Assembly (NCBI GenBank): GCA_026770705.1 | Contig: JANJGN010000004.1 | Location: forward strand, 95,790,001 to 95,854,000 | Length of the DNA stretch: 64,000 nt | Reading direction: 5' to 3' | DNA from: Isurus oxyrinchus | Lineage: Eukaryota | Shown here: positions 45,213 to 63,140 of the stretch, one piece after another | Numbering within the stretch: position 1 is the stretch's first letter | How the letters are laid out: every line of letters begins with the position of its first letter | The notes under the pieces: generated by a model | Told to the model about the DNA's origin: nothing | Database searches by the model: none | The model's input: the letters and a program-made list of their open reading frames with translations, nothing else | Position numbers and translations under genes: made by a program

Positions 45213-46201
45213 TTAATGTCTCGGCCAATATTCATTCCTCAATCACTGTCATCACAACAGACTTTTGGTCACTCATCTCATGGCCATTTGTGGGAGCTGG
45301 CTGTGAAGTACTTTAGCATGTCACCAAGCACAAGAAGATCCTATAAATCTTCCTTGTGGCTTATGGAGCAAGGGGTGTTATGTGGAATTTCACAAAACAA
45401 GAGTTTACAGCAAGAGGTTTTGGAGATGCAAGTCACCAATACAGCAAGTCACTGTCCTGCTAACATTATAGAAATAAAACATTAATCCAGTTTCAGACAA
45501 AAAGCATCAATAAAATCCTCCCTGCATATAACGCACCTATGTCTTAATGAATTTGCTATAAGTATTGTTGAACTTAGTCTGATTTTTTTCAGTTCAAATC
45601 TGAATTGATTTAATTCAGATCCTTTTCTACCCTGTTATTTCCCAGCATAGTTCATGTTTTGCCAGGAGGACGAAACACTCTGTGCTGGATGTCTCTGTAT
45701 GGCCCCATCCTTGTCTCAACAAAGTTGACAGTTGCTTTTCCGCAAGTGCAACAGCTTTTGCTGCTTGCAACGTTCGGTGTTTCTTTTGATAACTTAAGGC
45801 AGGTTTTCCTAGTCCTACCACTGCAGCCAAAAGTCGGTTTCCCGCTGGTGTAAAGATAATTTGAAATTTTCCGATCCCGAACTCCATGGCAGGTCAGGTA
45901 GCCCCCCACCGCCCCCCCGCGTCATGTCGGGAATGTCATTTGCATATATTTGAAAATCATGAATACTCATTAGGAACCCAGCTCGCTAGAATCATGCCCC
46001 CACTCCAGATCAGATGGCCACACCGGCGGATAATTAGACTGGTGTGATTCATGGCTGCATGTAAGTGACGTGCATCTAGCAAACTGCATTTCACTCGGGA
46101 CCTTGAAGAGTGCACACATAGTGCTCACCTACCTTTCACTGCACTGTGTACACAGCTAATCCAACTCCCATGCCAGGGTTGCTTAGGCAAGACCAGCAGG
46201 A

Positions 46202-46258
46202 ATGCTTACCTGGCAGGGGAGAGACCTTGATCGGGTTTCTGCCAGGGAAAGGTCATCA
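46202..46258 (+). ncRNA. U1 snRNA-derived 5' head of the Tx1 LINE (not a functional U1 gene)
   Basis: 46202-46232 ATGCTTACCTGGCAGGGGAGAGACCTTGATC matches vertebrate U1 nt 1-31 at 28/31. It is followed by GGGTTTCTGCCAGGG, similar to U1 GGTTTTCCCAGGG, with part of loop I missing. Confidence 0.85.
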
Positions 46259-46262
46259 AGCA

Positions 46263-47225
46263 ATGGCTATAACCAATCAAACCCCATACTATGGGGTACC
46301 TAACACCATCTGAGTCATGGTGAAGGGCAGCGAAGAAGGAGTAGTTATGGATCGGGCCTTCTTCACCAAGAGGATCCTATACAAGGTGTGTGGTTTTGAG
46401 GCTGCAGAGATCTATTGCCTACAGGACTTCCCCAGCGCTGGATTTTTTGATGTGACGTTCAAGCAAGTGGCAGCTTGCATCAAGCTCCTGAAGGCGTTTG
46501 AGGAGAAGAGAGACCTGCCAGAGATAAAGATCCTGACAGCGGAGCCACTCTTTGCTCTGCTGTTGCAACGGGACCGGGTAGTGACGGTGCATCTTTACAA
46601 CCCCTTCGTCCCTGTCGCTGACGTGCTCACCTTCCTCACCAGGTACTTCAATAAGGTTGGGAGCTGCACCGCGGTTAGAGATGATTTGGGGATCTGGACA
46701 TGCAAACGCCAGGTTAAGGTCACGCTCAAGACCGATGATAAGGGAGCCATCTTCCACCCTCCTTCCAGATTCGCTATCGGGGGAAGCCGTGGCTACCTTG
46801 TCTACACTGGGCAACCCAAACTTTGTCGCTCATGTGGCAAGGCTGGTCATGTGGTGGCCAACTGCAGCGCCGTCCTCTGCAAGAACTGCAAACAGGAAGG
46901 GCACCAGACAAAAGATTGCAAACAGGCTAAGTGCTGCAACCTGTGTGGGGAGGCAAGTCACCTCTACAGGACCTGCCCCAAACGTTGCCGTACTTATACA
47001 CAGGCAGCCAAAGCCAATGAGGGGGAAGCAGAAGAAATGCCTCATGTCACTCCAACCACCAAGGCCCCCAGGGAGAACAACGGGACAAAGGAGGACACAG
47101 AGAGAGATAAGGTGGAGGAAAAGATTGGGGCAACAGACAGCCAATCAACAACACTGCCCCCTGAACCTCTCACTCCTCAGGTGAGTGAATCAATGGAGGA
47201 GGAGGAGGCAGCAGTGGAAAAGTAG
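46263..47225 (+). pseudogene. Tx1 ORF1 (ZCCHC3-like N-terminal region plus three CCHC zinc knuckles), disrupted
   Basis: ATG 46263; in-frame TGA at 46311 (probably CGA decay); open 46317-47225. Knuckles CRSCGKAGHVVANC, CKNCKQEGHQTKDC, CNLCGEASHLYRTC. A low-complexity tail probably continued to ~47780. Confidence 0.85.
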
Positions 47226-47787
47226 CAGGGGGAGTGAAGAGAGCCAAAAGGAAGAAGGGGCTAAGAAGGAACCAAGCCATTTCTCAGACAAGAGGCAAGA
47301 GGCATGGATAACAAGGGCAGCATCTCTTTGGACGAAGAAGGGCCAGGGCGGCACCGACAGAAGAAGCGGCAAAACGTTAGGGAGTTGGAGGACAAGACAC
47401 CCAAGCTCCAGAACATTGGAGACAATGAGGAGACCAGCGCACCCCAACTTTGCCCACAACCCGAAGAGGCCAGTGCACCACAGCCCCAGGAATCTGGAAG
47501 CAGTGAGGCGCTCAGCGCATCCCAGCTCCGGGAAGCTGGGAGCAGCAACGCCCCAGAGAGGGAGAGGATTGAAGAAGCTTCTCCAATGAAGGTTATTTCA
47601 AACCCCGCTCTCTGCACAGACCCCTAGATGCCACCCGAGCAGAACATTGCCAATGGGGAGGGTCAGGACAGTTTCCTCAGCCCATCCAAAGTAAGGCAAT
47701 ATGAGCACACTACGGGCATGAAGGAGCAGACTAAAGGTCTGGGACTCTCAGAGACAACAGGTTTGGTAAGAGAATAAATGCTTTAAA

Positions 47788-50700
47788 ATGGATTTAAAGA
47801 TTATATCCATAAATGTGCATAGCATTAAATCTACTACGTGATGTGTTGCAACCTTAGACTACTTGCCAAGGTCAAAGCTGACCTGTTGTTTCTGCAGGAG
47901 TGTGCAATACTGCACCTCAGCTCCTACAGGCAATGGTCACAATGGTGGGCCCATGGGCCATCGATCTGGTCGGGAGGAAATGACTCTCGTTCCTCCGGCC
48001 TGGGGATTCTGCTGCGGGGAGGCAACTTCACCGTCTCCCAGGTTAAGGAGGTGGAGGGCGGGCGCCTCCTCGTAGCAGACGTAATGTACAAGAATGCTCC
48101 ACTCCGGTTAATTAACGTGTACGCCCCGTCACAAGGGGCTGAGTAGCTGGAGGTTTATCAGCAGCTCCCACTGCTGCTGGTGACCTCCAGGCCGGTCATT
48201 CTGGGTGGGGACTTCAACTGCATCATCGATGCGGCTGGACGATCCAGCAAGGCCGACAGCAGATTGGACACTACATCCAGATCCCTGATGGAAACAGTAA
48301 AGGATGCCAAGCTGCACGACATCTTCTGCAACCCTGCAGACGGAGCACAGCATAGATACACCTGGTCGCGGCCTGCGGGTCCATCCATTCCGGGATAGAC
48401 TTCCTGTTTGTGTCCCGTGCATTCGCAGTCAGATCCACCGACGTCAAGCCGGTGTTTTTCTCTGACCACTGCCTCCTACTGGCTGACTGCCACTTAGAGA
48501 AAGACCAGAGTGTGGGCAGGGAGGCATGGAAGCTAAACGTGCAACTGCTGACCCCAGAGAACATTGAGGAGCTCAAGAGGGATTACAAAGGTTGGAGAAC
48601 TGTGAAACCCCTCTTTGAGTCACTGACACACTGGTGGGAATCGATCAAGGGAAACATCAAGAGGTTTTTCATCCTCAAAGGCACCCAGAAAGCTAGAAAG
48701 GAACAGAGGGAAATCTCTCGACTCCAGAAAAACATGCAGAATCTGCTCCGGCTGCAGTCGATGGGGGTCAATGTCAAGGAGGAACTCCTTGGAGGCCTCC
48801 AAGATCATCTTCCGTTCCAGAGTCCACTCCGTGGAGCGGGATGAGACGTGCTCACGTTTCTTCTTCCAAAAGGTACACAGAGAGAGCTCTGTGATCAGCA
48901 GCCTGAAGGAAGAAGATGGCTCAGTAAAGTCATCTCAATCCGACATTTTGAGGATCAGCAAATCCTTTTATGCCGGATTGTATGACGTGAAGCCCACAGA
49001 CAGCACGGCCTCCCAGTCCTTCCTGTCCTCTTAGGTCTTAGACAACAGTACACGGGAGAGCCTGGACAAATCGCTAACTCCTGACGAACTGACCAAGGCC
49101 CTTGAGTCCTTCGAGAAGAGTAAAACTCCCAGAAGTAACGGCTTGCCGGTGGAGTTGTATTCGGCTCTGTGGGACTGGATCGGCCCGGACCTGCTAGAAG
49201 TATACGAGAGTATGCTCCTGTCCGGTAGTATGTCAGAATCCATGAGGAAAGGCATTATCACCCTCATCCAAAAGCACAAGGGGGAAAGGGAGGAAATTAG
49301 AAATTGGCGACCCATTTCACTGTTGAATGTGGACTATAAGATTCTGTCCAAGGTCATCGCCAATCGGGTCAAATCCACTCTGGAATTGGTGATCCACCCT
49401 GACCAGACCTGCACTGTGCCGGACAGGATCTCTGACAGGCAATCGTATCCCTGAGCAGCGTGAGGCTATGTACAGGACAGGGGTGTGGATACCTGCCTCA
49501 TCAGCCTGGATCAGGAGAAGGCCTTTGACAGAATACATGGTGGGCATGCTCTCCAAAATGGGGTTTGGGGAGGGAATTCACAATTGGATCCAACTGCTCT
49601 ACACTAGCATCAGTAGCGCAGTCTCAATCAATGGGTGGGAATCAGATAGCTTTCCGATTAAATCTGGAGTCAGGCAGTGCTGTCCTCTCTCGCCTGTTCT
49701 TTTCATGTGTTGCATAGAACCCTTTGCTGAGTCCATCAGGAAGGATCTGAGCATAAGAGGAGTGACGATCCCAGGTAGTGGAGGCACTCAAATCAAAGCC
49801 TCCCTGTACATGGACGATGTCGCCGTCTTCTGCTCAGATCTGCTGTCGGTGCGCAGACTGATCCACATCTGCGACCAGTTCGAACTGGCCTCGGGAGCCA
49901 AGGTAAATAGTGGGAAGAGCAAGGCCATGTTCTTCGGTAACTGAGCTGACCAATCTTTTGTCCCCTTCACCGTCAGGGCTGACGGCCTGAAGGTGCTGGG
50001 GATATGGTTCGGAGGGACCAGGGCATGCGTTAGAAACTGGGAGGAGCGAGTGTCTATGGTGAAAAGGAAACTGGGCATGTGGGAGCGACGCTCCCTCTCC
50101 ATTGCAGGTAAGAACCTGGTCATCAGGTGTGAGGCACTCTCGCTGTTGCTGTACGTGGTGCAGGTCTGGCCCATTCCACGCTCCTGCGTGGTAGCAATCA
50201 CCCGAGCCATCTTCCACTTTATCTGGAGATCGAAAATAGATCGTGTCTGCAGGGACACGATATACAAGCCTCTAGATAAAGGGGGAAGAAAACGTGCCCA
50301 ACATCGCCCTCATACTGATGGCCACCTTTGTGTGTGGCTGCATCAAGCGGTGCATAGACCCTCAGTATGCAAACACTAAGTGTCACTACATGCTGAGGTT
50401 CTACCTGTCCCCAGTGTTGCGAAGGTTGGGTCTGGTCACGCTGCCGCAGAACGCTCCAAGTAGTTGGACTGTGCCATACCACTTGTCGCTCGTGGAAAAA
50501 TTTATGCAGAGAAACACCTTTGACCACAAGTCCATCAGGCAGTGGTCGGCACGTAACGTCTTAGAGGTTCTGAGGGAAAAGGAGAGGGTGGATCCGGTGG
50601 GATGCTTCCCCGAGCGGACTGTCAAAGTCATTTGGCAGAATGCCTCATCGCCAGAACTTTCCAACAAGCACCAAGACGTAGCTTGGCTAGTGGTGAGAAA

Positions 50701-51137
50701 AGCCCTCCCTGTCAGATCCTTCCTACACGCCAGGAGTCTCAGCCCCTCTGCACGTTGCCCTCGAGGTGGCTGCGGTGTGGAAGAGACCATTGTTCACCTT
50801 CTTGTAGATTGTACCTTTGCAAAGAAGGTCTGGAGAGGTATGCAGTGGTTTCTGTCGAGGTTCATCCCGAGCAGTTCTGTGACACAGGACTCTGTGCTCT
50901 ATGGGCTGTTCCCAGGGACACACCAAGACAAACATCAACTGCAGCAAGAGGATCATCAACTCGGTGAAAGACTCTGTTTGGTCTGCCCGTAACTTGTTGG
51001 TCTTCCAGTGCAAAGAGTTGTCCCTGACCGAGTGTTGCAGACTGGCACATTCCAAAGTCCAGGACTACGTGCTGAGGGATGCACTAAAGCTTGGGGCAGC
51101 TGCCGCAAAGGTGCAATGGGGAAGGGTTGCTGCCTAA
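47788..51137 (+). pseudogene. Tx1 ORF2 (APE endonuclease, RT, C-terminal zinc finger), multiple stops and frameshifts
   Basis: MDLKIISINV, FLQE, GGDFN, SDH; WRPISLLNVDYKILSK, LDQEKAF, GVRQCCPLSP, YMDD; CPRGGCGVEETIVHLLVDC. Confidence 0.92.
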
Positions 51138-51960
51138 GACCTTTCTGCCACAGTGCACTGAGGGGCTGGGAACTGTAAAGAGCCCCTCGGGATGTACAGC
51201 TCAAAATGAATGTCTGCCAATGATTGTAATATTCATTGTTTGTACTGATACACCTTGTGATTCATGTTGTAAAAGTTGAACCTGATTGTACTTTTGTGAT
51301 GGTGATTTTGAAATGGTTTGAAATGTTGTTGAAGATTTATGAATAAAGTATATTTTTGCAAAAAAAAAAGACCAGCAGGAATGCGGGGCAGGTGGAGATC
51401 AGAGCCAAGGATTCTCAGGTGAGACCAGTGTGGAGGCCCAGAGGGGCAGGGTGAGGCTTGGATGGCAAAGGCTTCACTTTGGGAGATGGAGTGAGACAAG
51501 ACAGAGGCAAGGGAAGGCAAAGGCTTGACTGGGGTTGGGGAGGAAAGGAGCCTGGGCGAAAAGGGTGCATGGAGACACATGGCTGGAGATGGGTGATTGG
51601 GGAAGAGAGCACAGGGGTACATGACTTGGGGGGCATGCAGGGTGGAGAAATTAGTCAGGGCCTGAAAGCATAGACAGTCCTGGGTAATAGCGCAAGAAGT
51701 AGTTGGGGCCAGAAAGCATAGCCAGTCCTTGGCAATGGTGCCACACTTCAGAGAGCTGTGCTTGGGACGTTTGTCCTAGTTCCAGTCCAGGGAGGGGCCT
51801 GTCAGTCTGTGTCAGTTGGGTCTAGCATGGTGTGCGGGCATGGTCAATCCTTCACACATGTTGGGTCCTGGGGGTTAGTGGCTTGATACTGGGCTGCAGA
51901 TGGCACAGTCACAGTCAGAGGAGGCATCGGCAGCCTGTATGTGGGAAACAGGTAATGTAA

Positions 51961-58444: not shown

Positions 58445-59004
58445 AATACAAACAGAAAATGCTGGAACTACTCAACAGGCTATGGCAGCAACTGTGGAGA
58501 GAAACAGTTAACATTTCAGGTCTGTGAACTTACCTCAGAACAGGAAAAAGTTAGAGATGTAACAGGTTTTGAGCAAGGGGTGGGTGGGACAAGGACAAAA
58601 GGAAGGTCTGTGATAGGGTGAAAGCTGGAGAGATTGAAAGGCAGAAGAGTTAATCCTCCTGGGAAAAAGAGGGTGGCGATAGGGCAAGAAAAGAAATAAA
58701 ATGATATGCCTAGAGCCGGTGTGCTACTGACTGAACAAAAACGAAACAAGGAAGGCAAAGGAAACAAAACGGAGCACAGATTATGGTTGGAAATTATTGA
58801 ACTCAAAGTTGAGTCCTGAAAGGTGTAAAGTGTCTACTTGAAAGATGAGGTGCTGTTCCTCAAATTTACATTGAGCTTCACTGGAACAGTACAGCAGGCC
58901 AAGGACGGAGATGTCAGCATGAGAGCAAGGTGGAGAATTAAAATGACAGTTCACCGGAAGCTCGGGGTCATGCTTGCAGATTGAACTGGGGTGTTCCACA
59001 AAGT
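58445..59004 (-). mobile_element. Older, diverged Penelope-like element, 3' part; continues at 63035-63140
   Basis: KHDPELPVNCHFNSPPCSHADISVLGLL..EEQHLIF. The upstream LYIGETKCELGDHFVEH lies at ~63035-63095. Degenerate hammerhead remnant at ~58505-58540. Confidence 0.85.
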
Positions 59005-59101
59005 TAAAAACAAAAAAACTGCAGATGCTGGAAATCCAAAACAAAAACAGAATTACCTGGAAAAACTCAGCAGGTATGGCAGCATCGGCGGAGAAGAAAA
59101 G

Positions 59102-59140
59102 AGTTGACGTTTCGAGTCCTCATGACCCTTCGACAGAACT
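59102..59140 (-). ncRNA. Minimal type I hammerhead ribozyme motif
   Basis: Identical motif to 15636-15674. Confidence 0.65.
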
Positions 59141-59460
59141 TGAGTTCGAGTCCAAGAAAGAGTTGAAATATAAGCTGGTTTAAGGTGTGTGTGTGGGGGG
59201 CGGAGAGATAGAGAGAGAGAGAGAGAGAGAGGTGGTGGGGGGGTGGTTGTGGTTATATGGACAAACAAGCAGTGATAGAAGCAGATCATCAAAAGATGTC
59301 AACGACAATAGTACAATAGAACACATAGGTGTTAAAGTTAAAGTTGGTGATATTATCTAAACGAATGTGCTAATTAAGAATGGATGGTAGGGCACTCAAG
59401 GTATAGCTCTAGTGGGGGTGTTTTTTGTTATAATGGAAATAGGTGGGAAAAGGAAAATCT

Positions 59461-61455
59461 TTATAATTTATTGGAAACAAAAAGGAAGGGGAAAACAGAA
59501 AGGGGGTGGGGATGGGGGAGGGAGTTGTTGAATTCAATATTCAGTCCGGAAGGCTGTAAGGTGCCTAGTCGGAAGATGAGGTGTTGTTCCTCCAGTTTGC
59601 GTTGGGCTTCACTGGAACAATGCAGCAAGCCAAGGACAGACATGTGGGCAAGAGAGCAGAGTGGAGTGTTAAAATGGCAAGCGACAGGGAGGTTTGGGTC
59701 ATTCTTGCGCTCAGACCACAGGTGTTCTGCAAAGCGGTCGCCCAGTTTACGTTTGGTCTCTCCAATGTAGAGGAGACCACATTGGGAGCAACGAATGCAG
59801 TAGACTAAGTTGGGGGAAATGCAAGTGAAATGCTGCTTCACTTGAAAGGAGTGTTTGGGCCCTTGGACGGTGAGGAGAGAGGAAGTGAAGGGGCAGGTGT
59901 TACATCTTTTGCGTGGGCATGGGGTGGTGCCATAGGAGGGGGTTGAGGAGTAGGGGGTGATGGAGGAGTGGACCAGGGTGTCCCGGAGGGAGCGATCCCT
60001 ACGGAATGCCGATAAGGGGGGTGAAGGGAAGATGTGTTTGGTGGTGGCATCATGCTGGAGTTGGTGGAAATGGCGGAGGATGATCCTTTGAATGCAGAGA
60101 CTGGTGGGGTGATAAGTGAGGACAAGGGGGACCCTATCATGTTTCTGGGAGGGAGGAGAAGGCGTGAGGGCGGATGCGCGGGAGGTGGGCCGGACACAGT
60201 TGAGGGCCCTGTCAACGACCGTGGGTGGAAAACCTCGGTTAAGGAAGAAGGAGGACATGTCAGAGGAACTGTTTTTGAAGGTAGCATCATCGGAACAGAT
60301 GCGACGAAGGCGAAGGAACTGGGAGAATGGGATGGAGTCCTTACAGGATGCGGGGTGTGAGGAGCTGTAGTCGAGGTAGCTGTGGGAGTCGGTGGGTTTG
60401 TAATGGATATTGGTGGACAGTCTATCAACAGAGATTGAGACAGAGAGGTCAAGGAAGGGAAGGGAAGTGTCAGAGATGGACCACGTGAAAATGATGGAGA
60501 GGTAGAGATTGGAAGCAAAATTAATAAATTTTTCCAAGTCCCGACGAGAGCATGAAGCGGCACCGAAGTAATCATCGATGTACTGGAGAAAAAGTTGTGG
60601 AAGGGGGCCGGAGTAGGACTGCAACAAGGAATGTTCCACATACCCCATAAAGAGACAGGCATAGCTGGGGCCCATGCGGGTACCCATAGGCACACCTTTT
60701 ATTTGGAGGAAGTGAGAGGAGTTGAAGGAGAAATTGTTCAGCGTGAGAACAAGTTCAGCCAGACGGAGGAGAGTAGTGGTGGATGGGGATTGTTCGGGCC
60801 TCTGTTCGAGGAAGAAGCTAAGGGCCCTCAGACCATCCTGGTGGGGGATAGAGGTGTAGAGGGATTGGACATCCATGGTGAAGAACAAGCAGTTGGGGCC
60901 AGGGAACTGGAAATTGTTGATGTGACATAAGGTGTCAGAGGAATCACTGATGGAGGTGGGAACGGACTGGACAAGGGGAGAGAGAAGGGAGTCAAGATAA
61001 CGAGAAATGAGTTCCATGGGGCAGGAGCAAGCTGAGACGATCGGTCTACCGGGGCAGTTCTGTTTGTGGATTTTGGGTAGGAGATAGAAGCAGGCCGTCC
61101 GAGGTTGGGCGACTATCAGGTTGGAAGCTGTGGGAGGGAGATCCCCAGAGGAGATGAGGTCAGTGACAGTCCTGGAAACAATGGCTTGATGTTCAGTGGT
61201 GGGGTCATGGTCCAGGGAGAGGTAGGAGGAAGTGTCTGCGAGTTGACGCTCAGCCTCCGCGAGGTAGAGGTCAGTGCGCCAGACAACAACAGCACCACCC
61301 TTGTCAGCGGGTTTGATGACAATGTCAGGGTTGGACCTGAGAGAATGGAGCGCAGTAAGTTCAGAGAGAGACAGGTTAGAATGGGTGAGAGGAGCAGAGA
61401 AATTGAGGCGACTAATGTCGCGCCGACAGTTCTCAATAAAAAGATCGAGAGAAGA
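59461..61455 (-). CDS. Penelope-like RT plus GIY-YIG endonuclease, 5'-truncated but uninterrupted frame
   Basis: KPADKGGAVV, YLLPKIHK, GRPIVS, MDVQSLYTSIP, GVPMG, YIDD, FLDL; linker CPRKRCNTC; NLVYCIRCSQCGLLYIGET. The native stop is removed by a 14-bp deletion near 59524. No native start codon. Confidence 0.85.
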   Translation of the reverse strand, partial: SSLDLFIENCRRDISRLNFSAPLTHSNLSLSELTALHSLRSNPDIVIKPADKGGAVVVWRTDLYLAEAERQLADTSSYLSLDHDPTTEHQAIVSRTVTDLISSGDLPPTASNLIVAQPRTACFYLLPKIHKQNCPGRPIVSACSCPMELISRYLDSLLSPLVQSVPTSISDSSDTLCHINNFQFPGPNCLFFTMDVQSLYTSIPHQDGLRALSFFLEQRPEQSPSTTTLLRLAELVLTLNNFSFNSSHFLQIKGVPMGTRMGPSYACLFMGYVEHSLLQSYSGPLPQLFLQYIDDYFGAASCSRRDLEKFINFASNLYLSIIFTWSISDTSLPFLDLSVSISVDRLSTNIHYKPTDSHSYLDYSSSHPASCKDSIPFSQFLRLRRICSDDATFKNSSSDMSSFFLNRGFPPTVVDRALNCVRPTSRASALTPSPPSQKHDRVPLVLTYHPTSLCIQRIILRHFHQLQHDATTKHIFPSPPLSAFRRDRSLRDTLVHSSITPYSSTPSYGTTPCPRKRCNTCPFTSSLLTVQGPKHSFQVKQHFTCISPNLVYCIRCSQCGLLYIGETKRKLGDRFAEHLWSERKNDPNLPVACHFNTPLCSLAHMSVLGLLHCSSEAQRKLEEQHLIFRLGTLQPSGLNIEFNNSLPHPHPLSVFPFLFVSNKL

Positions 61456-62573
61456 TCCTTGTTGCAGTCCTACTCCGTCCCCTTCCACAACTTTTTCTCC
61501 GGTACATCGATGATTATTTCGGTGCCGCTTCATGCTCTCGTCGGGACTTGGAAAAATTTATTAATTTTGCTTCCAATCTCTACCTCTCCATCATTTTCAC
61601 GTGGTCCATCTCTGACACTTCCCTTCCCTTCCTTGACCTCTCTGTCTCAATCTCTGTTGATAGACTGTCCACCAATATCCATTACAAACCCACCAACTTC
61701 CACAGCTACCTCGACTACAGCTCCTCACACCCCGCATCCTGTAAGGACTCCATCCCATTCTCGCAGTTCCTTCACCTCCGTCGCATCTGTTCCGATGATG
61801 CTACCTTCAAAAACAGTTCCTCTGACATGTCCTCCTTCTTCCTTAACCGAGGTTTTCCACCCACGGTCGTTGACAGGGCCCTCAACCGTGTCCGGCCCAT
61901 CTCCCGCGCATCCGCCCTCACGCCTTCTCCTCCCTCCCAGAAACATGATGGGGTCCCCCTTGTCCTCACTTATCACCCCACCAGCCTCCGCATTCAAAGG
62001 ATCATCCTCCGCCATTTCCGCCAACTCCAGCATGATGCCACCACCAAACACATCTTCCCTTCACCCCCTTTATCGGCATTCCGTAGGGATCGCTCCCTCC
62101 GGGACACCTTGGTCCACTCCTCCATCACCCCTTACTCCTAAACCCCCTCCTATGGCACCACCCCATGCCCACGCAAAAGATGTAACACCTGCCCCTTCAC
62201 TTCCTCTCTCCTCACCGTCCAAGGGCCCAAACACTCCTTTCAAGTGAAGCAGCATTTCACTTGCATTTCCCCCAACTTAGTCTACTGCATTCGTTGCTCC
62301 CAATGTGGTCTCCTCTACATTGGAGAGACCAAACGTAAACTGGGCGACCGCTTTGCAGAACACCTGTGGTCTGTCCGCAAGAATGACCCAAACCTCCCTG
62401 TCGCTTGCCATTTTAACACTCCACCCTGCTCTCTTGCCCACATGTCTGTCCTTGGCTTGCTGCATTGTTCCAGTGAAGCCCAACGCAAACTGGAGGAACA
62501 ACACCTCATCTTCCGACTAGGCACCTTACAGCCTTCCGGACTGAATATTGAATTCAACAACTTTAGGTCGTGA
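61456..62573 (+). pseudogene. Penelope RT C-terminus plus GIY-YIG in the inverted arm, with one nonsense codon (TAA 62139-62141)
   Basis: Same protein as the minus arm; retains the native end FNNFRS-stop. Confidence 0.85.
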
Positions 62574-62981
62574 GCTCCCTCCCCCATCCCCACCCCCTTT
62601 CTGTTTTCCCCTTCCTTTTTTTTTCCAATAAATTATAAAGATTTTCCTTTTCCCACCTATTTCCATTATATAAAAAAAAATTTAAAAAAAATTAAAAAAA
62701 ACACCCCCACTAGAGCTATACCTTGAGTGCCCTACCATCCATTCTTAATTAGCACATTCGTTTAGATAATATCACCAACTTTAACTTTAACACCTATGTG
62801 TTCTATTGTACTATTGTCGTTGACATCTTTTGATGATCTGCTTCTATCACTGCTTGTTTGTCCATATAACCACAACCACCCCCCCACCACCTCTCTCTCT
62901 CTCTCTCTCTCTATCTCTCCGCCCCCCACACACACACCTTAAACCAGCTTATATTTCAACTCTTTCTTGGACTCGAACTCA

Positions 62982-63020
62982 AGTTCTGTCGAAGGGTCAT
63001 GAGGACTCGAAACGTCAACT
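62982..63020 (+). ncRNA. Minimal type I hammerhead ribozyme motif
   Basis: AGTT CTGTCGA A GGGTC ATGAG GACTC GAA ACGT C AACT; predicted cleavage after C63016. Confidence 0.65.
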
Positions 63021-63034
63021 CTTTTCTTCTCCGC

Positions 63035-63140
63035 TGTTCCACAAAGTGGTCACCCAATTCACATTTGGTCTCCCCAATGTAGAGGAAAGCTAACTGTGAG
63101 CAGTGATTGCACTAGACTACTAAATTGAAGGAAGTTCTTG
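63035..63140 (-). mobile_element. Remainder of the older Penelope copy (GIY-YIG)
   Basis: Minus translation NLV..NHCSQLAFLYIGETKCELGDHFVEH joins 58781-59004 across the TSD. Confidence 0.8.

What the first reader, a model, noticed from the sequence alone, without database searches (positions are those of the whole stretch)
46189..46320. Tx1-clade LINE whose entire 5' UTR is a U1 snRNA 5' end (U1-headed autonomous LINE)
Seen: directly inside the left copy of a 17-bp TSD the sequence matches U1 snRNA nt 1-31 at 28/31, including the 5'-splice-site-pairing CTTACCTG. Weaker U1 similarity continues to ~46258, and the ORF1 ATG follows at 46263. There is no room for a conventional internal-promoter 5' UTR. 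The U1 piece lies between the TSDs, so it was part of the integrated cDNA. The last TSD bases (ATGC) overlap U1 ATAC, giving 5' junction microhomology exactly at U1 +1. Established: U1 has an external (PSE/DSE) promoter; the Tx1-clade Keno elements target U2 genes; crocodilian SINEU elements have U1/U2 heads; U6-L1 chimeras arise by template switching. Inference: the source element may sit in, or be fused to, a U1-type gene and use its promoter and cap site, so that dispersed copies carry the U1 leader. I do not know of a described autonomous LINE family with a fixed U1 head.
Basis: partly seen in the sequence, partly recalled or inferred. Interest (0 to 1): 0.88.

Follow-up and report, generated by a model that had tools for sequence, protein, structure and literature searches.

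The report
Shark Tx1-type LINE with U1 leader
This is an old, broken copy of an abundant shark jumping gene (a Tx1-type LINE) whose short leader was borrowed from the start of the U1 spliceosomal RNA; the leader is real and shared by the whole family, but LINEs of this type with U1 heads were already described in crocodilians.

Summary
A 5.16-kb polyadenylated LINE (46206-51367) lies between perfect 17-bp target-site duplications. Its first ~57 bases before the ORF1 ATG (46263) resemble the 5' end of U1 snRNA (Rfam U1, 16 bits, E 0.014 in an 80-base search; far below gathering).

It is not a one-off chimera. Contigs of two DNA runs from two organisms show summed depth jumping about 30-100-fold at 46205/46206. 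26 and 27 contigs match from 46205 onward, and upstream they share only the letters ATA before running into unrelated flanks. So full-length family members begin at U1 +1.

The stop at 46311 is private to this copy. Two shark gene models carry the same leader or the same ORF1 N-terminus.

Kojima 2015 (PMC4494074, section 16) reports crocodilian Tx1 families (Tx1-2_Crp, Tx1-2B_Crp, Tx1-4_AMi) with U1-originated heads.

Whether source copies sit in U1 genes and use the U1 promoter was not testable in this window. Three contigs join U1 nt ~25-31 directly to different ORF1-internal positions, which hints at it.

This scan has already noted the same head on other pieces of this genome, including two Tx1 copies said to split a U1 gene. 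Verdict: new member of a known kind, moderate interest.

The parts
46189..46205 (+). Left target-site duplication (17 bp; the first two A's could equally belong to the tail at the right copy)
   Evidence: family D4, 100% identical to 51368-51384
46206..46232 (+). Strongly U1-like part of the leader (U1 nt 5-31). With TSD letters 46202-46205 it reads as U1 nt 1-31; other copies have ATA before 46205
   Evidence: Rfam U1 alignment; table 7 (loose ends before 46205 end in ...ATA)
46233..46262 (+). Rest of the 57-nt leader, weakly U1-like (CCAGGG..AGG). A 7-letter length variant at 46252 distinguishes subfamilies
   Evidence: table 4 (7 left out at 46252: X1 4 contigs, X5 11 contigs)
46263..47800 (+). 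ORF1 (type I: two ZCCHC3-type RNA-binding domains plus CCHC knuckles). In this copy it is broken by in-frame stops at 46311, 47223 and at least three more further on; the end coordinate is approximate
47829..48395 (+). ORF2 endonuclease region (AP-endonuclease type), two stop-free pieces
   Evidence: Exo_endo_phos E 0.012 (profile 24-103) and E 0.00097 (profile 139-182), both below Pfam's cut-off but colinear
49035..50376 (+). ORF2 reverse transcriptase region, in pieces on two frames
   Evidence: RVT_1 E 2.5e-14; human LINE-1 ORF2p about 1e-19 vs R2 2.5e-5
50276..50989 (+). ORF2 C-terminal zinc-binding domain (zf-RVT)
   Evidence: PF13966, E about 6e-12
51342..51367 (+). AATAAA signal (51342-51347) and A tail (51360-51367)
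51368..51384 (+). Right target-site duplication

Best explanation
Window 46206-51367 is one dispersed, long-dead, full-length copy of an abundant shark LINE of the L1/Tx1 group: a type I ORF1 with CCHC knuckles, then AP-endonuclease, RT, zf-RVT and a poly(A) tail.

The family's whole 5' leader (about 50-57 nt) derives from the 5' end of U1 snRNA. The leader is inherited with the element. It was not made at this insertion. The RNA that was copied here began at or within four bases of U1 +1, and the 5' junction formed on a short AT.C overlap with the target.

Shown: family-wide head, start at U1 +1, unrelated flanks, private stops.

Inferred (about 0.4-0.45): the head originated, and may still be propagated, because source copies lie inside U1 genes near stem-loop I. 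There they would be transcribed from the external U1 promoter, as Keno is in U2 genes and R2 in rDNA. Off-target L1-like integrations, such as this one, would then carry the co-transcribed U1 piece along.
For: Between-TSD position and tail.

U1 model match.

Family-wide head:
- Summed contig depth is 177-320 in the four bins 46094-46189. In the three bins 46190-46261 it rises to 6779, 29799 and 10282 (X1) and 774, 8739 and 22015 (X5), and it stays in the thousands to 46650.
- Loose ends 'before 46205' occur in 26 (X1), 27 (X5) and 3 (X16) contigs. Their 30-letter upstream consensus has agreement of only 0.41-0.63, yet it always ends in ATA.
- Records X17-17 (its letter 1 lies at 46205, running to 46530), X17-18, X16-9 and X16-10 carry head and ORF1 contiguously in other copies.
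- At 46311 nearly all other depth reads another letter (4418.5 of 4576.1; 59657 of 59800.9; 42.7 of 42.7; 236.7 of 236.7).
- A 7-letter head variant is present in different proportions in the two organisms.

Proteins: the part of P0001 (Cetorhinus maximus) upstream of ORF1 is colinear with the translated leader. P0009 (Carcharodon carcharias) starts MAIT... like the codons at 46263.

Precedent: Kojima 2015, section 16.

For the inferred step: joints 46226>46417, 46231>46563 (X1) and 46232>46486 (X5), each at single-copy-like depth of 17-20 (table 5). Scan notes s1-863549 and s1-901366 are unchecked.
Against: - All runs were Logan contigs, so depth is not copy number and contig ends do not prove RNA starts. 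The 'RNA?' labels are guesses.
- The three joints have sides of 22-27 letters, under the 30 that the tool advises.
- This copy's 3' flank is not U1. Its best similarity to the head (GGCAGG-GGAGA) is reached by 122 of 2000 random window segments.
- The 26-27 unrelated flanks show that most full-length copies are not in U1 genes.
- U1 likeness continues weakly past nt 31. This fits a single capture of U1 nt 1 to about 60 with a small deletion better than a target junction at nt 31.
- From recall, not tested: transcripts from snRNA promoters are normally processed at a 3' box and elongate or polyadenylate poorly. That sits badly with a 5-kb polyadenylated RNA.
- The RT phylogeny for Tx1 was not done.
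Confidence: 0.8

Rival explanations
1. The U1-derived leader, perhaps with the start of ORF1, acts as an internal or initiator-type promoter or as an RNA 5'-end module. Every dispersed full-length copy could then be transcribed from U1 +1 without any U1 gene context. The head would be an ancient single capture that is now an ordinary LINE 5' UTR.
For: The family is abundant and dispersed, with unrelated flanks at 26-27 full-length starts. Two head-length subfamilies imply several successive master copies (table 4). The leader folds into a hairpin somewhat better than shuffles (-24.1 kcal/mol, z -2.53, 5 of 200 shuffles as good). Weak U1 colinearity runs up to the ATG.
Against: No internal promoter is known for U1 genes (Kojima 2015, Introduction passage). 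57 nt is very short for a LINE promoter. Nothing here measures transcription.
Confidence: 0.3
2. U1 5' sequences were added to LINE cDNAs recurrently by template switching or 5' addition, which is Kojima's model for SINEU heads. Heads would then be independent acquisitions rather than inherited.
For: Kojima 2015 sections 17-18: 26 SINEU-2 copies carry U1-like 5' extensions whose 3' truncation points differ by at most 22 nt. Here three contigs join U1 nt ~25-31 to different ORF1-internal positions (table 5).
Against: Full-length copies share one junction, one shortened stem-loop I and the same leader up to the ATG. The head variants behave as subfamily markers. Only the first ~31-60 nt of U1 are present, never the 3' part expected if a mature snRNA were copied from its 3' end.
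Confidence: 0.1
3. This is a one-off U1/LINE template-switch chimera made at this insertion, like human U6-L1 chimeras.
For: The short overlap (AT.C) at the 5' junction could be read as a switch point.
Against: Dozens of other contigs carry the same head fused at the same place to ORF1, in two organisms. P0001 from another shark species has it too.
Confidence: 0.02
4. The similarity to U1 arose by chance or from low complexity.
For: The Rfam score is only 16 bits against a gathering score of 69.5, and the match is absent from the wider searches.
Against: 11 of the first 12 model letters are identical and colinearity runs through stem-loop I. Other copies restore the ATA of the U1 start. The same kind of head is documented in crocodilian Tx1.
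Confidence: 0.01

Closest known systems
Crocodilian Tx1-Mar families with snRNA heads (Tx1-2_Crp, Tx1-2B_Crp, Tx1-4_AMi with U1 heads; Tx1-11_Crp with a U2 head) and SINEU (Kojima 2015, PMC4494074)
   Same: These are autonomous Tx1-type LINEs whose consensus 5' end is a U1-originated sequence. The U1 part is of similar size: the SINEU-2 U1/U2 junction lies at about positions 53-58 (section 12). They are polyadenylated, and how they are transcribed is an open question there as well.
   Different: The host is a shark rather than a crocodilian. The flanks here are unrelated and look AT-rich by eye in the consensus lines, with no shared transposon target such as Mariner-N4_AMi. Stem-loop I is about 6-7 nt shorter here. 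Whether the two heads are homologous could not be tested, because fig. 1B and the supplements are not held.
Keno (Tx1 clade, inserts in U2 snRNA genes) and other target-specific LINEs co-transcribed with their target (R2 in 28S rDNA)
   Same: Same LINE group. The snRNA gene could serve as host and external promoter. Co-transcribed upstream target sequence would explain a head that starts at snRNA +1.
   Different: This copy and most full-length copies seen are not in a U1 gene. [quoted passage not shown]
U6/L1 and other snRNA-L1 template-switch chimeras in human (as summarised in Kojima 2015 Discussion)
   Same: An snRNA sequence lies 5' of LINE sequence inside one pair of TSDs.
   Different: In those chimeras each junction is unique and the LINE is variably truncated. 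Here one fixed junction is shared by a whole family and only the U1 5' end is present.
Dada-U1 DNA transposons (PMC8869645, passages)
   Same: A transposon associated with U1 genes in fishes.
   Different: That is a DNA transposon with 6-7 bp TSDs inserted in U1 genes. It has no U1 head carried to new sites.

Membership tests
Tx1 clade (L1 group) non-LTR retrotransposon | RT domain groups with L1/Tx1 rather than with other LINE groups | tested here: met
   the RT piece matches human LINE-1 ORF2p at 8e-20 to 2.2e-19 and R2 proteins at 2.5e-5 or worse. This shows the L1 group only, not Tx1 against L1.
Tx1 clade (L1 group) non-LTR retrotransposon | RT phylogeny places it inside Tx1 (RTclass1/Repbase references) | not testable with these tools
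   No Tx1 reference sequence was available. Protein names and the atlas were uninformative.
Tx1 clade (L1 group) non-LTR retrotransposon | Type I ORF1 (RNA-binding domains plus CCHC knuckles), not Transposase_22 | tested here: met
   (PF23057, PF23058, zf-CCHC). one search gave only nucleocapsid-type knuckle hits and no L1 ORF1p. Passages of Ivancevic 2016 (PMC5203782) say such ORF1 variants in non-mammalian animals are consistent with Tx1.
Tx1 clade (L1 group) non-LTR retrotransposon | AP-type endonuclease N-terminal to the RT | tested here: inconclusive
   two colinear Exo_endo_phos matches (15.8 and 19.4 bits), both below the 24.5-bit cut-off; the gene is decayed.
snRNA-headed Tx1 families (Kojima 2015) | A U1- or U2-originated sequence at the 5' end of the family, not of a single copy | tested here: met
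   (26 and 27 contigs starting at the same U1 position; head contiguous with ORF1 in 4 listed records).
snRNA-headed Tx1 families (Kojima 2015) | Membership in the Tx1-Mar lineage or preference for Mariner-N4_AMi-type targets | tested here: not met
   the upstream flanks have a consensus agreement of 0.41-0.42, so there is no shared target. Lineage relationship was not tested.
Target-specific (snRNA-gene-homing) Tx1 such as Keno | The element is flanked on both sides by the target gene at a fixed site | tested here: not met
   This copy: the 3' flank has no Rfam U1 hit and no significant head similarity, and the 5' flank is unrelated. At family level the test is inconclusive (three joints; unchecked scan notes).
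snRNA/L1 template-switch chimera | A unique junction per insertion, with the snRNA copied from its 3' end | tested here: not met
   the same junction occurs in many copies.: only model positions 1 to about 60 are recognisable.
U1 snRNA gene or pseudogene | Full-length U1 with stem-loops II-IV and an Sm site, reaching the Rfam gathering score | tested here: not met
   no match at gathering; 16 bits against 69.5, cut off at the 3' side.

The most novel reading that the evidence does not exclude
The family is, or descends from, a Tx1 lineage that homes to U1 snRNA genes near stem-loop I and is transcribed from the external U1 promoter. The U1 nt 1-31 head would then be co-transcribed target sequence. 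That would make it the first LINE known to target U1 genes, and a case of an snRNA-type promoter producing a 5-kb polyadenylated, protein-coding retrotransposon RNA that also spreads off-target genome-wide.
Probability: 0.35. Interest if true: 0.7.

Novelty: new member of a known kind. Interest (0 to 1): 0.4.

Why it matters
The finding extends U1-headed Tx1 LINEs from crocodilians to cartilaginous fishes, so the association of Tx1 elements with spliceosomal snRNA heads is either very old or recurrent. The shark family is abundant and its starts are sharply defined at U1 +1. That makes it good material for the question Kojima left open: how retroposons with snRNA heads are transcribed when U1 has only an external promoter. 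If source copies in U1 genes are confirmed, it would add U1 to the short list of snRNA targets of LINEs. For annotation, the head explains spurious 'U1-like' hits and chimeric gene models such as P0001 and P0009.

Tried and rejected
- Rfam at gathering on the whole window found nothing. A 401-base E-value search gave only chance hits: MIR164, snoZ256 and SNORA77.
- There is no second copy of the element or head in the window.
- I tested whether the target site is U1-like. The 3' flank shares GGCAGG-GGAGA with the head, but 122 of 2000 random window segments and 255 of 2000 shuffles score as well. Rejected.
- Clade naming by protein search failed. The RT piece gave 15 proteins among 58 candidates, all unnamed or 'uncharacterized'. 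The atlas gave generic RT clusters.
- The metagenome scan with ORF1 confirmed 20 loci out of 143 matched stretches. All were 25-40% identical, nearly all over the knuckle region only, and none was a relative of the family. L001-L020 were not used further.
- Searching the scan's findings by sequence and by six words gave nothing.
- Paper searches for a shark or U1-targeting Tx1 returned only Kojima 2015 and papers that do not describe such a family. One search (ZCCHC3 + Tx1 + ORF1) returned 0. (SINEU) was swamped by SINEUP papers. Repbase and Dfam are not searchable here, and the supplements of Kojima 2015 (figs S1-S6) were not seen. Those supplements and fig. 1B could bear on whether the heads are homologous.
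- Expression is not shown. The 'RNA?' runs are guesses, and contigs cannot show starts.

Full report
**What is there**

Window 46189-51384 holds one LINE insertion on the + strand. A perfect 17-bp direct repeat (AAGACCAGCAGGAATGC) lies at 46189-46205 and 51368-51384. The right copy is preceded by AATAAA (51342-51347) and an A-run (51360-51369). The insert is therefore 46206-51367.

Its coding content is as follows:
- **ORF1:** two ZCCHC3-type RNA-binding domains and CCHC knuckles (PF23057 at 9.7e-15, PF23058 at 1.8e-24, zf-CCHC at 2.9e-6).
- **Endonuclease:** two colinear but sub-threshold Exo_endo_phos pieces.
- **Reverse transcriptase:** RVT_1 pieces (E 2.5e-14).
- **C-terminal domain:** zf-RVT (E about 6e-12).

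The RT piece matches human LINE-1 ORF2p at about 1e-19 and R2 proteins at 2.5e-5 or worse. ORF1 finds only nucleocapsid-type knuckles in the PDB and no L1 ORF1p.

This is the L1 group with a type I ORF1. Passages of Ivancevic et al. 2016 (PMC5203782) call that combination consistent with Tx1 in non-mammalian animals. I could not run an RT phylogeny, so 'Tx1' is an architecture-based label.

The copy is dead:
- ORF1, read in frame from 46263, has stops at 46311 and 47223 and at least three more before about 47800. Relatives read through the region downstream of 47225 (70% identity to P0002 over 101 residues).
- ORF2 is scattered over three frames.

No other copy lies in the window.

**The U1 likeness**

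Rfam's U1 model aligns 46202-46275 to model positions 1-85 with 16 bits, E 0.014, when only 80 bases are searched. It is absent at gathering and absent from a 401-base E-value search.

In the alignment, 11 of the first 12 letters are identical, including CUUACCUG. Stem-loop I is recognisable with a loop 6 letters shorter than the model. After it, only 10 of 25 aligned letters are identical.

The 64-nt leader folds into a hairpin at -24.1 kcal/mol (z -2.53; 5 of 200 shuffles fold as well). That is unremarkable on its own.

**Is it a one-off?**

No. One run search listed 24 runs of two coded organisms, 20 of which hold the stretch or a part of it. All are kept as Logan contigs.

I laid two DNA runs (X1, organism A; X5, organism B) and two small runs guessed to be RNA (X17, X16) on 45950-46650 at 80% likeness.

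- **Depth step.** Summed contig depth is 177-320 in the four bins 46094-46189. It jumps to 6779, 29799 and 10282 (X1) and 774, 8739 and 22015 (X5) in the three bins 46190-46261. It stays in the thousands through ORF1. Depth of contigs is not copy number, but the step marks the family's boundary.
- **Shared start.** Contigs that fit from 46205 onward and run into unlike sequence before it number 26 (X1), 27 (X5) and 3 (X16). The consensus of their upstream 30 letters has agreement of only 0.41-0.63, so the flanks are unrelated. It ends in ATA every time. Other full-length copies thus begin ATA + C + TTACCTGG..., which is the start of the Rfam U1 consensus. This copy has ATGC there because those four letters are target DNA (TSD).
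- **Head joined to ORF1.** Four listed records carry head and ORF1 contiguously in other copies: X17-17 (46205-46530, beginning at its own first letter), X17-18 (46206-46560), X16-9 (46206-46363) and X16-10 (46211-46320).
- **Head variants.** A 7-letter length variant at 46252 is seen in 4 contigs of X1 (279.5 of 2672.8 depth) and 11 of X5 (20227.8 of 23886.9). At 46234 nearly all others read C. The head therefore has subfamily structure and evolves with the element.
- **Private stop.** At 46311 almost all other depth carries another letter (4418.5 of 4576.1; 59657 of 59800.9; 42.7 of 42.7; 236.7 of 236.7). The stop is private to this copy, and the family's ORF1 starts at the ATG at 46263.

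Only the best-supported rows of each table were shown. Not shown were 146 other-letter rows, 11 joints, 372 loose ends and 2077 records.

Independent protein evidence agrees:
- The best ORF1 relatives are basking-shark models (P0001 79%, P0002 84%), from 9 proteins at E<=1e-10 among 588 candidates.
- Upstream of its ORF1 part, P0001 reads RGDTMVLPRQGRDGRPITNRNPNLYRGLPITVRVTVK. This is colinear with the window leader translated in the same frame, RGETLIGFLPGKGHQAMAITNQTPYYGVPNTI*VMVK.
- P0009, a white-shark model, begins MAITSRAPYHGVRNTVRMLVK. That matches the ATG at 46263 and puts a residue where this copy has its stop.

**Age**

X1 record 1 (1207 letters) covers 45950-46232 with 0 differences, and X5 record 25 (1206 letters) covers the same span with 5. 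Both reach only 27 letters into the insert, short of the 31 the tool asks for in a bridging record. A shared (orthologous) insertion in organism B is therefore likely but not strictly shown. The many stops and frame breaks also point to an old insertion.

**How it works**

Everything between the TSDs was cDNA, so the template RNA began at or within four bases of U1 +1. That step is shown.

The head is inherited. It has one fixed junction to ORF1, a shared shortened stem-loop I, and subfamily-specific variants.

Where the source copies get their promoter is not shown. Two readings remain.

(a) Source copies lie in U1 genes and are co-transcribed from the external U1 promoter, as Keno is in U2 genes or R2 in rDNA. 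Dispersed copies would then be off-target products.
- In favour: strong U1 identity ends at 46232.
- In favour: three single-copy-depth contigs join 46226, 46231 or 46232 directly to ORF1-internal positions 46417, 46563 and 46486 (table 5). This is the pattern of 5'-truncated insertions behind a fixed target site.
- In favour, as leads only: scan notes on other pieces of this genome report Tx1 copies splitting a U1 gene at stem-loop I (s1-863549 with a follow-up, and s1-901366). I could not check them.
- Against: the joints have sides of only 22-27 letters.
- Against: most full-length copies have unrelated flanks.
- Against: this copy's target is not U1-like.
- Against, from recall: snRNA promoters are coupled to 3'-box processing rather than to long polyadenylated transcripts.

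(b) The head plus downstream sequence suffices for initiation at U1 +1 in any location.
- In favour: the family is abundant and dispersed, and the head variants imply successive masters.
- Against: no internal U1 promoter is known (Kojima 2015, passage).

I put (a) at about 0.4-0.45 and (b) at about 0.3. Recurrent 5' addition gets about 0.1. A one-off chimera is excluded.

**Comparison with what is known**

I read the abstract, sections 12, 16, 17 and 18, and passages of Kojima 2015 (PMC4494074). I did not see its figures or supplements.

[quoted passage not shown] The U1 part of SINEU-2 ends near positions 53-58 (section 12), a length similar to the shark leader.

What differs here is the host (a shark), the lack of a shared transposon target, and the shorter stem-loop I.

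Passages of Kojima & Jurka 2015 (PMC4640811) list only Keno and Utopia (U2), Dada-U1 and Dada-U6 as snRNA-gene-targeting transposons. My searches found no paper on a shark Tx1 with a U1 head or on a U1-targeting LINE. Repbase and Dfam could not be searched.

**Verdict**

- Observation: confirmed.
- Interpretation: partly supported.
- Novelty: new member of a known kind.
- Interest: moderate (0.4). The open part is the possible U1-gene homing and the U1 promoter.

The scan has already recorded this head on several other pieces of the same genome.

I therefore could not fetch the genomic flanks of P0001, P0002 and P0009.

Noticed in passing
window 45950-46100: The 5' flank of the insertion is itself a repeat. 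Summed contig depth is 540-2230 there, against about 180-320 just upstream of the TSD. Many contigs are 80-90% alike, and several contigs skip 68-126 bases between about 45993-46076 and 46120-46173 (tables 2, 5, 8). The repeat was not identified.
   Followed up: no
window 45950-46232: Organism B (X5 record 25) has the same flank-to-head contig with 5 differences in 283 bases, so the insertion is probably older than the split of the two coded organisms. The contig reaches only 27 letters into the insert.
   Followed up: partly
P0001 (Cetorhinus maximus) and P0009 (Carcharodon carcharias 'hyaluronidase-5-like'): Public gene models incorporate this LINE's ORF1. P0009 starts with about 77 residues of ORF1 N-terminus before its hyaluronidase part. 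P0001 reads through the U1-derived leader behind an unrelated N-terminal part. These are probably annotation chimeras or exonised LINE fragments.
   Followed up: no
window 46205-46213, minus strand: The reverse complement of the head's first letters reads CAGGTAAGC, a near-consensus 5' splice site. Antisense copies of this family in introns could therefore offer strong donor sites. This is read from the sequence, and the splice-site consensus is recalled.
   Followed up: no
records X17-18 and X16-9: Both small 'RNA?' runs, one from each organism, contain a contig in which the same 30 upstream letters precede the head at 46206. This is one particular copy present, and perhaps transcribed within a longer RNA, in both organisms.
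   Followed up: no
window 46252-46258: This copy carries the longer of two leader variants (7 extra letters). The shorter form predominates in organism B's run and is the minority in organism A's (table 4). This fits the scan note of a '49-nt leader' elsewhere (s1-898288).
   Followed up: partly
window 58992-63047: Other scan notes on this window describe a head-to-head Penelope palindrome with hammerhead ribozymes. I did not examine it.
   Followed up: no
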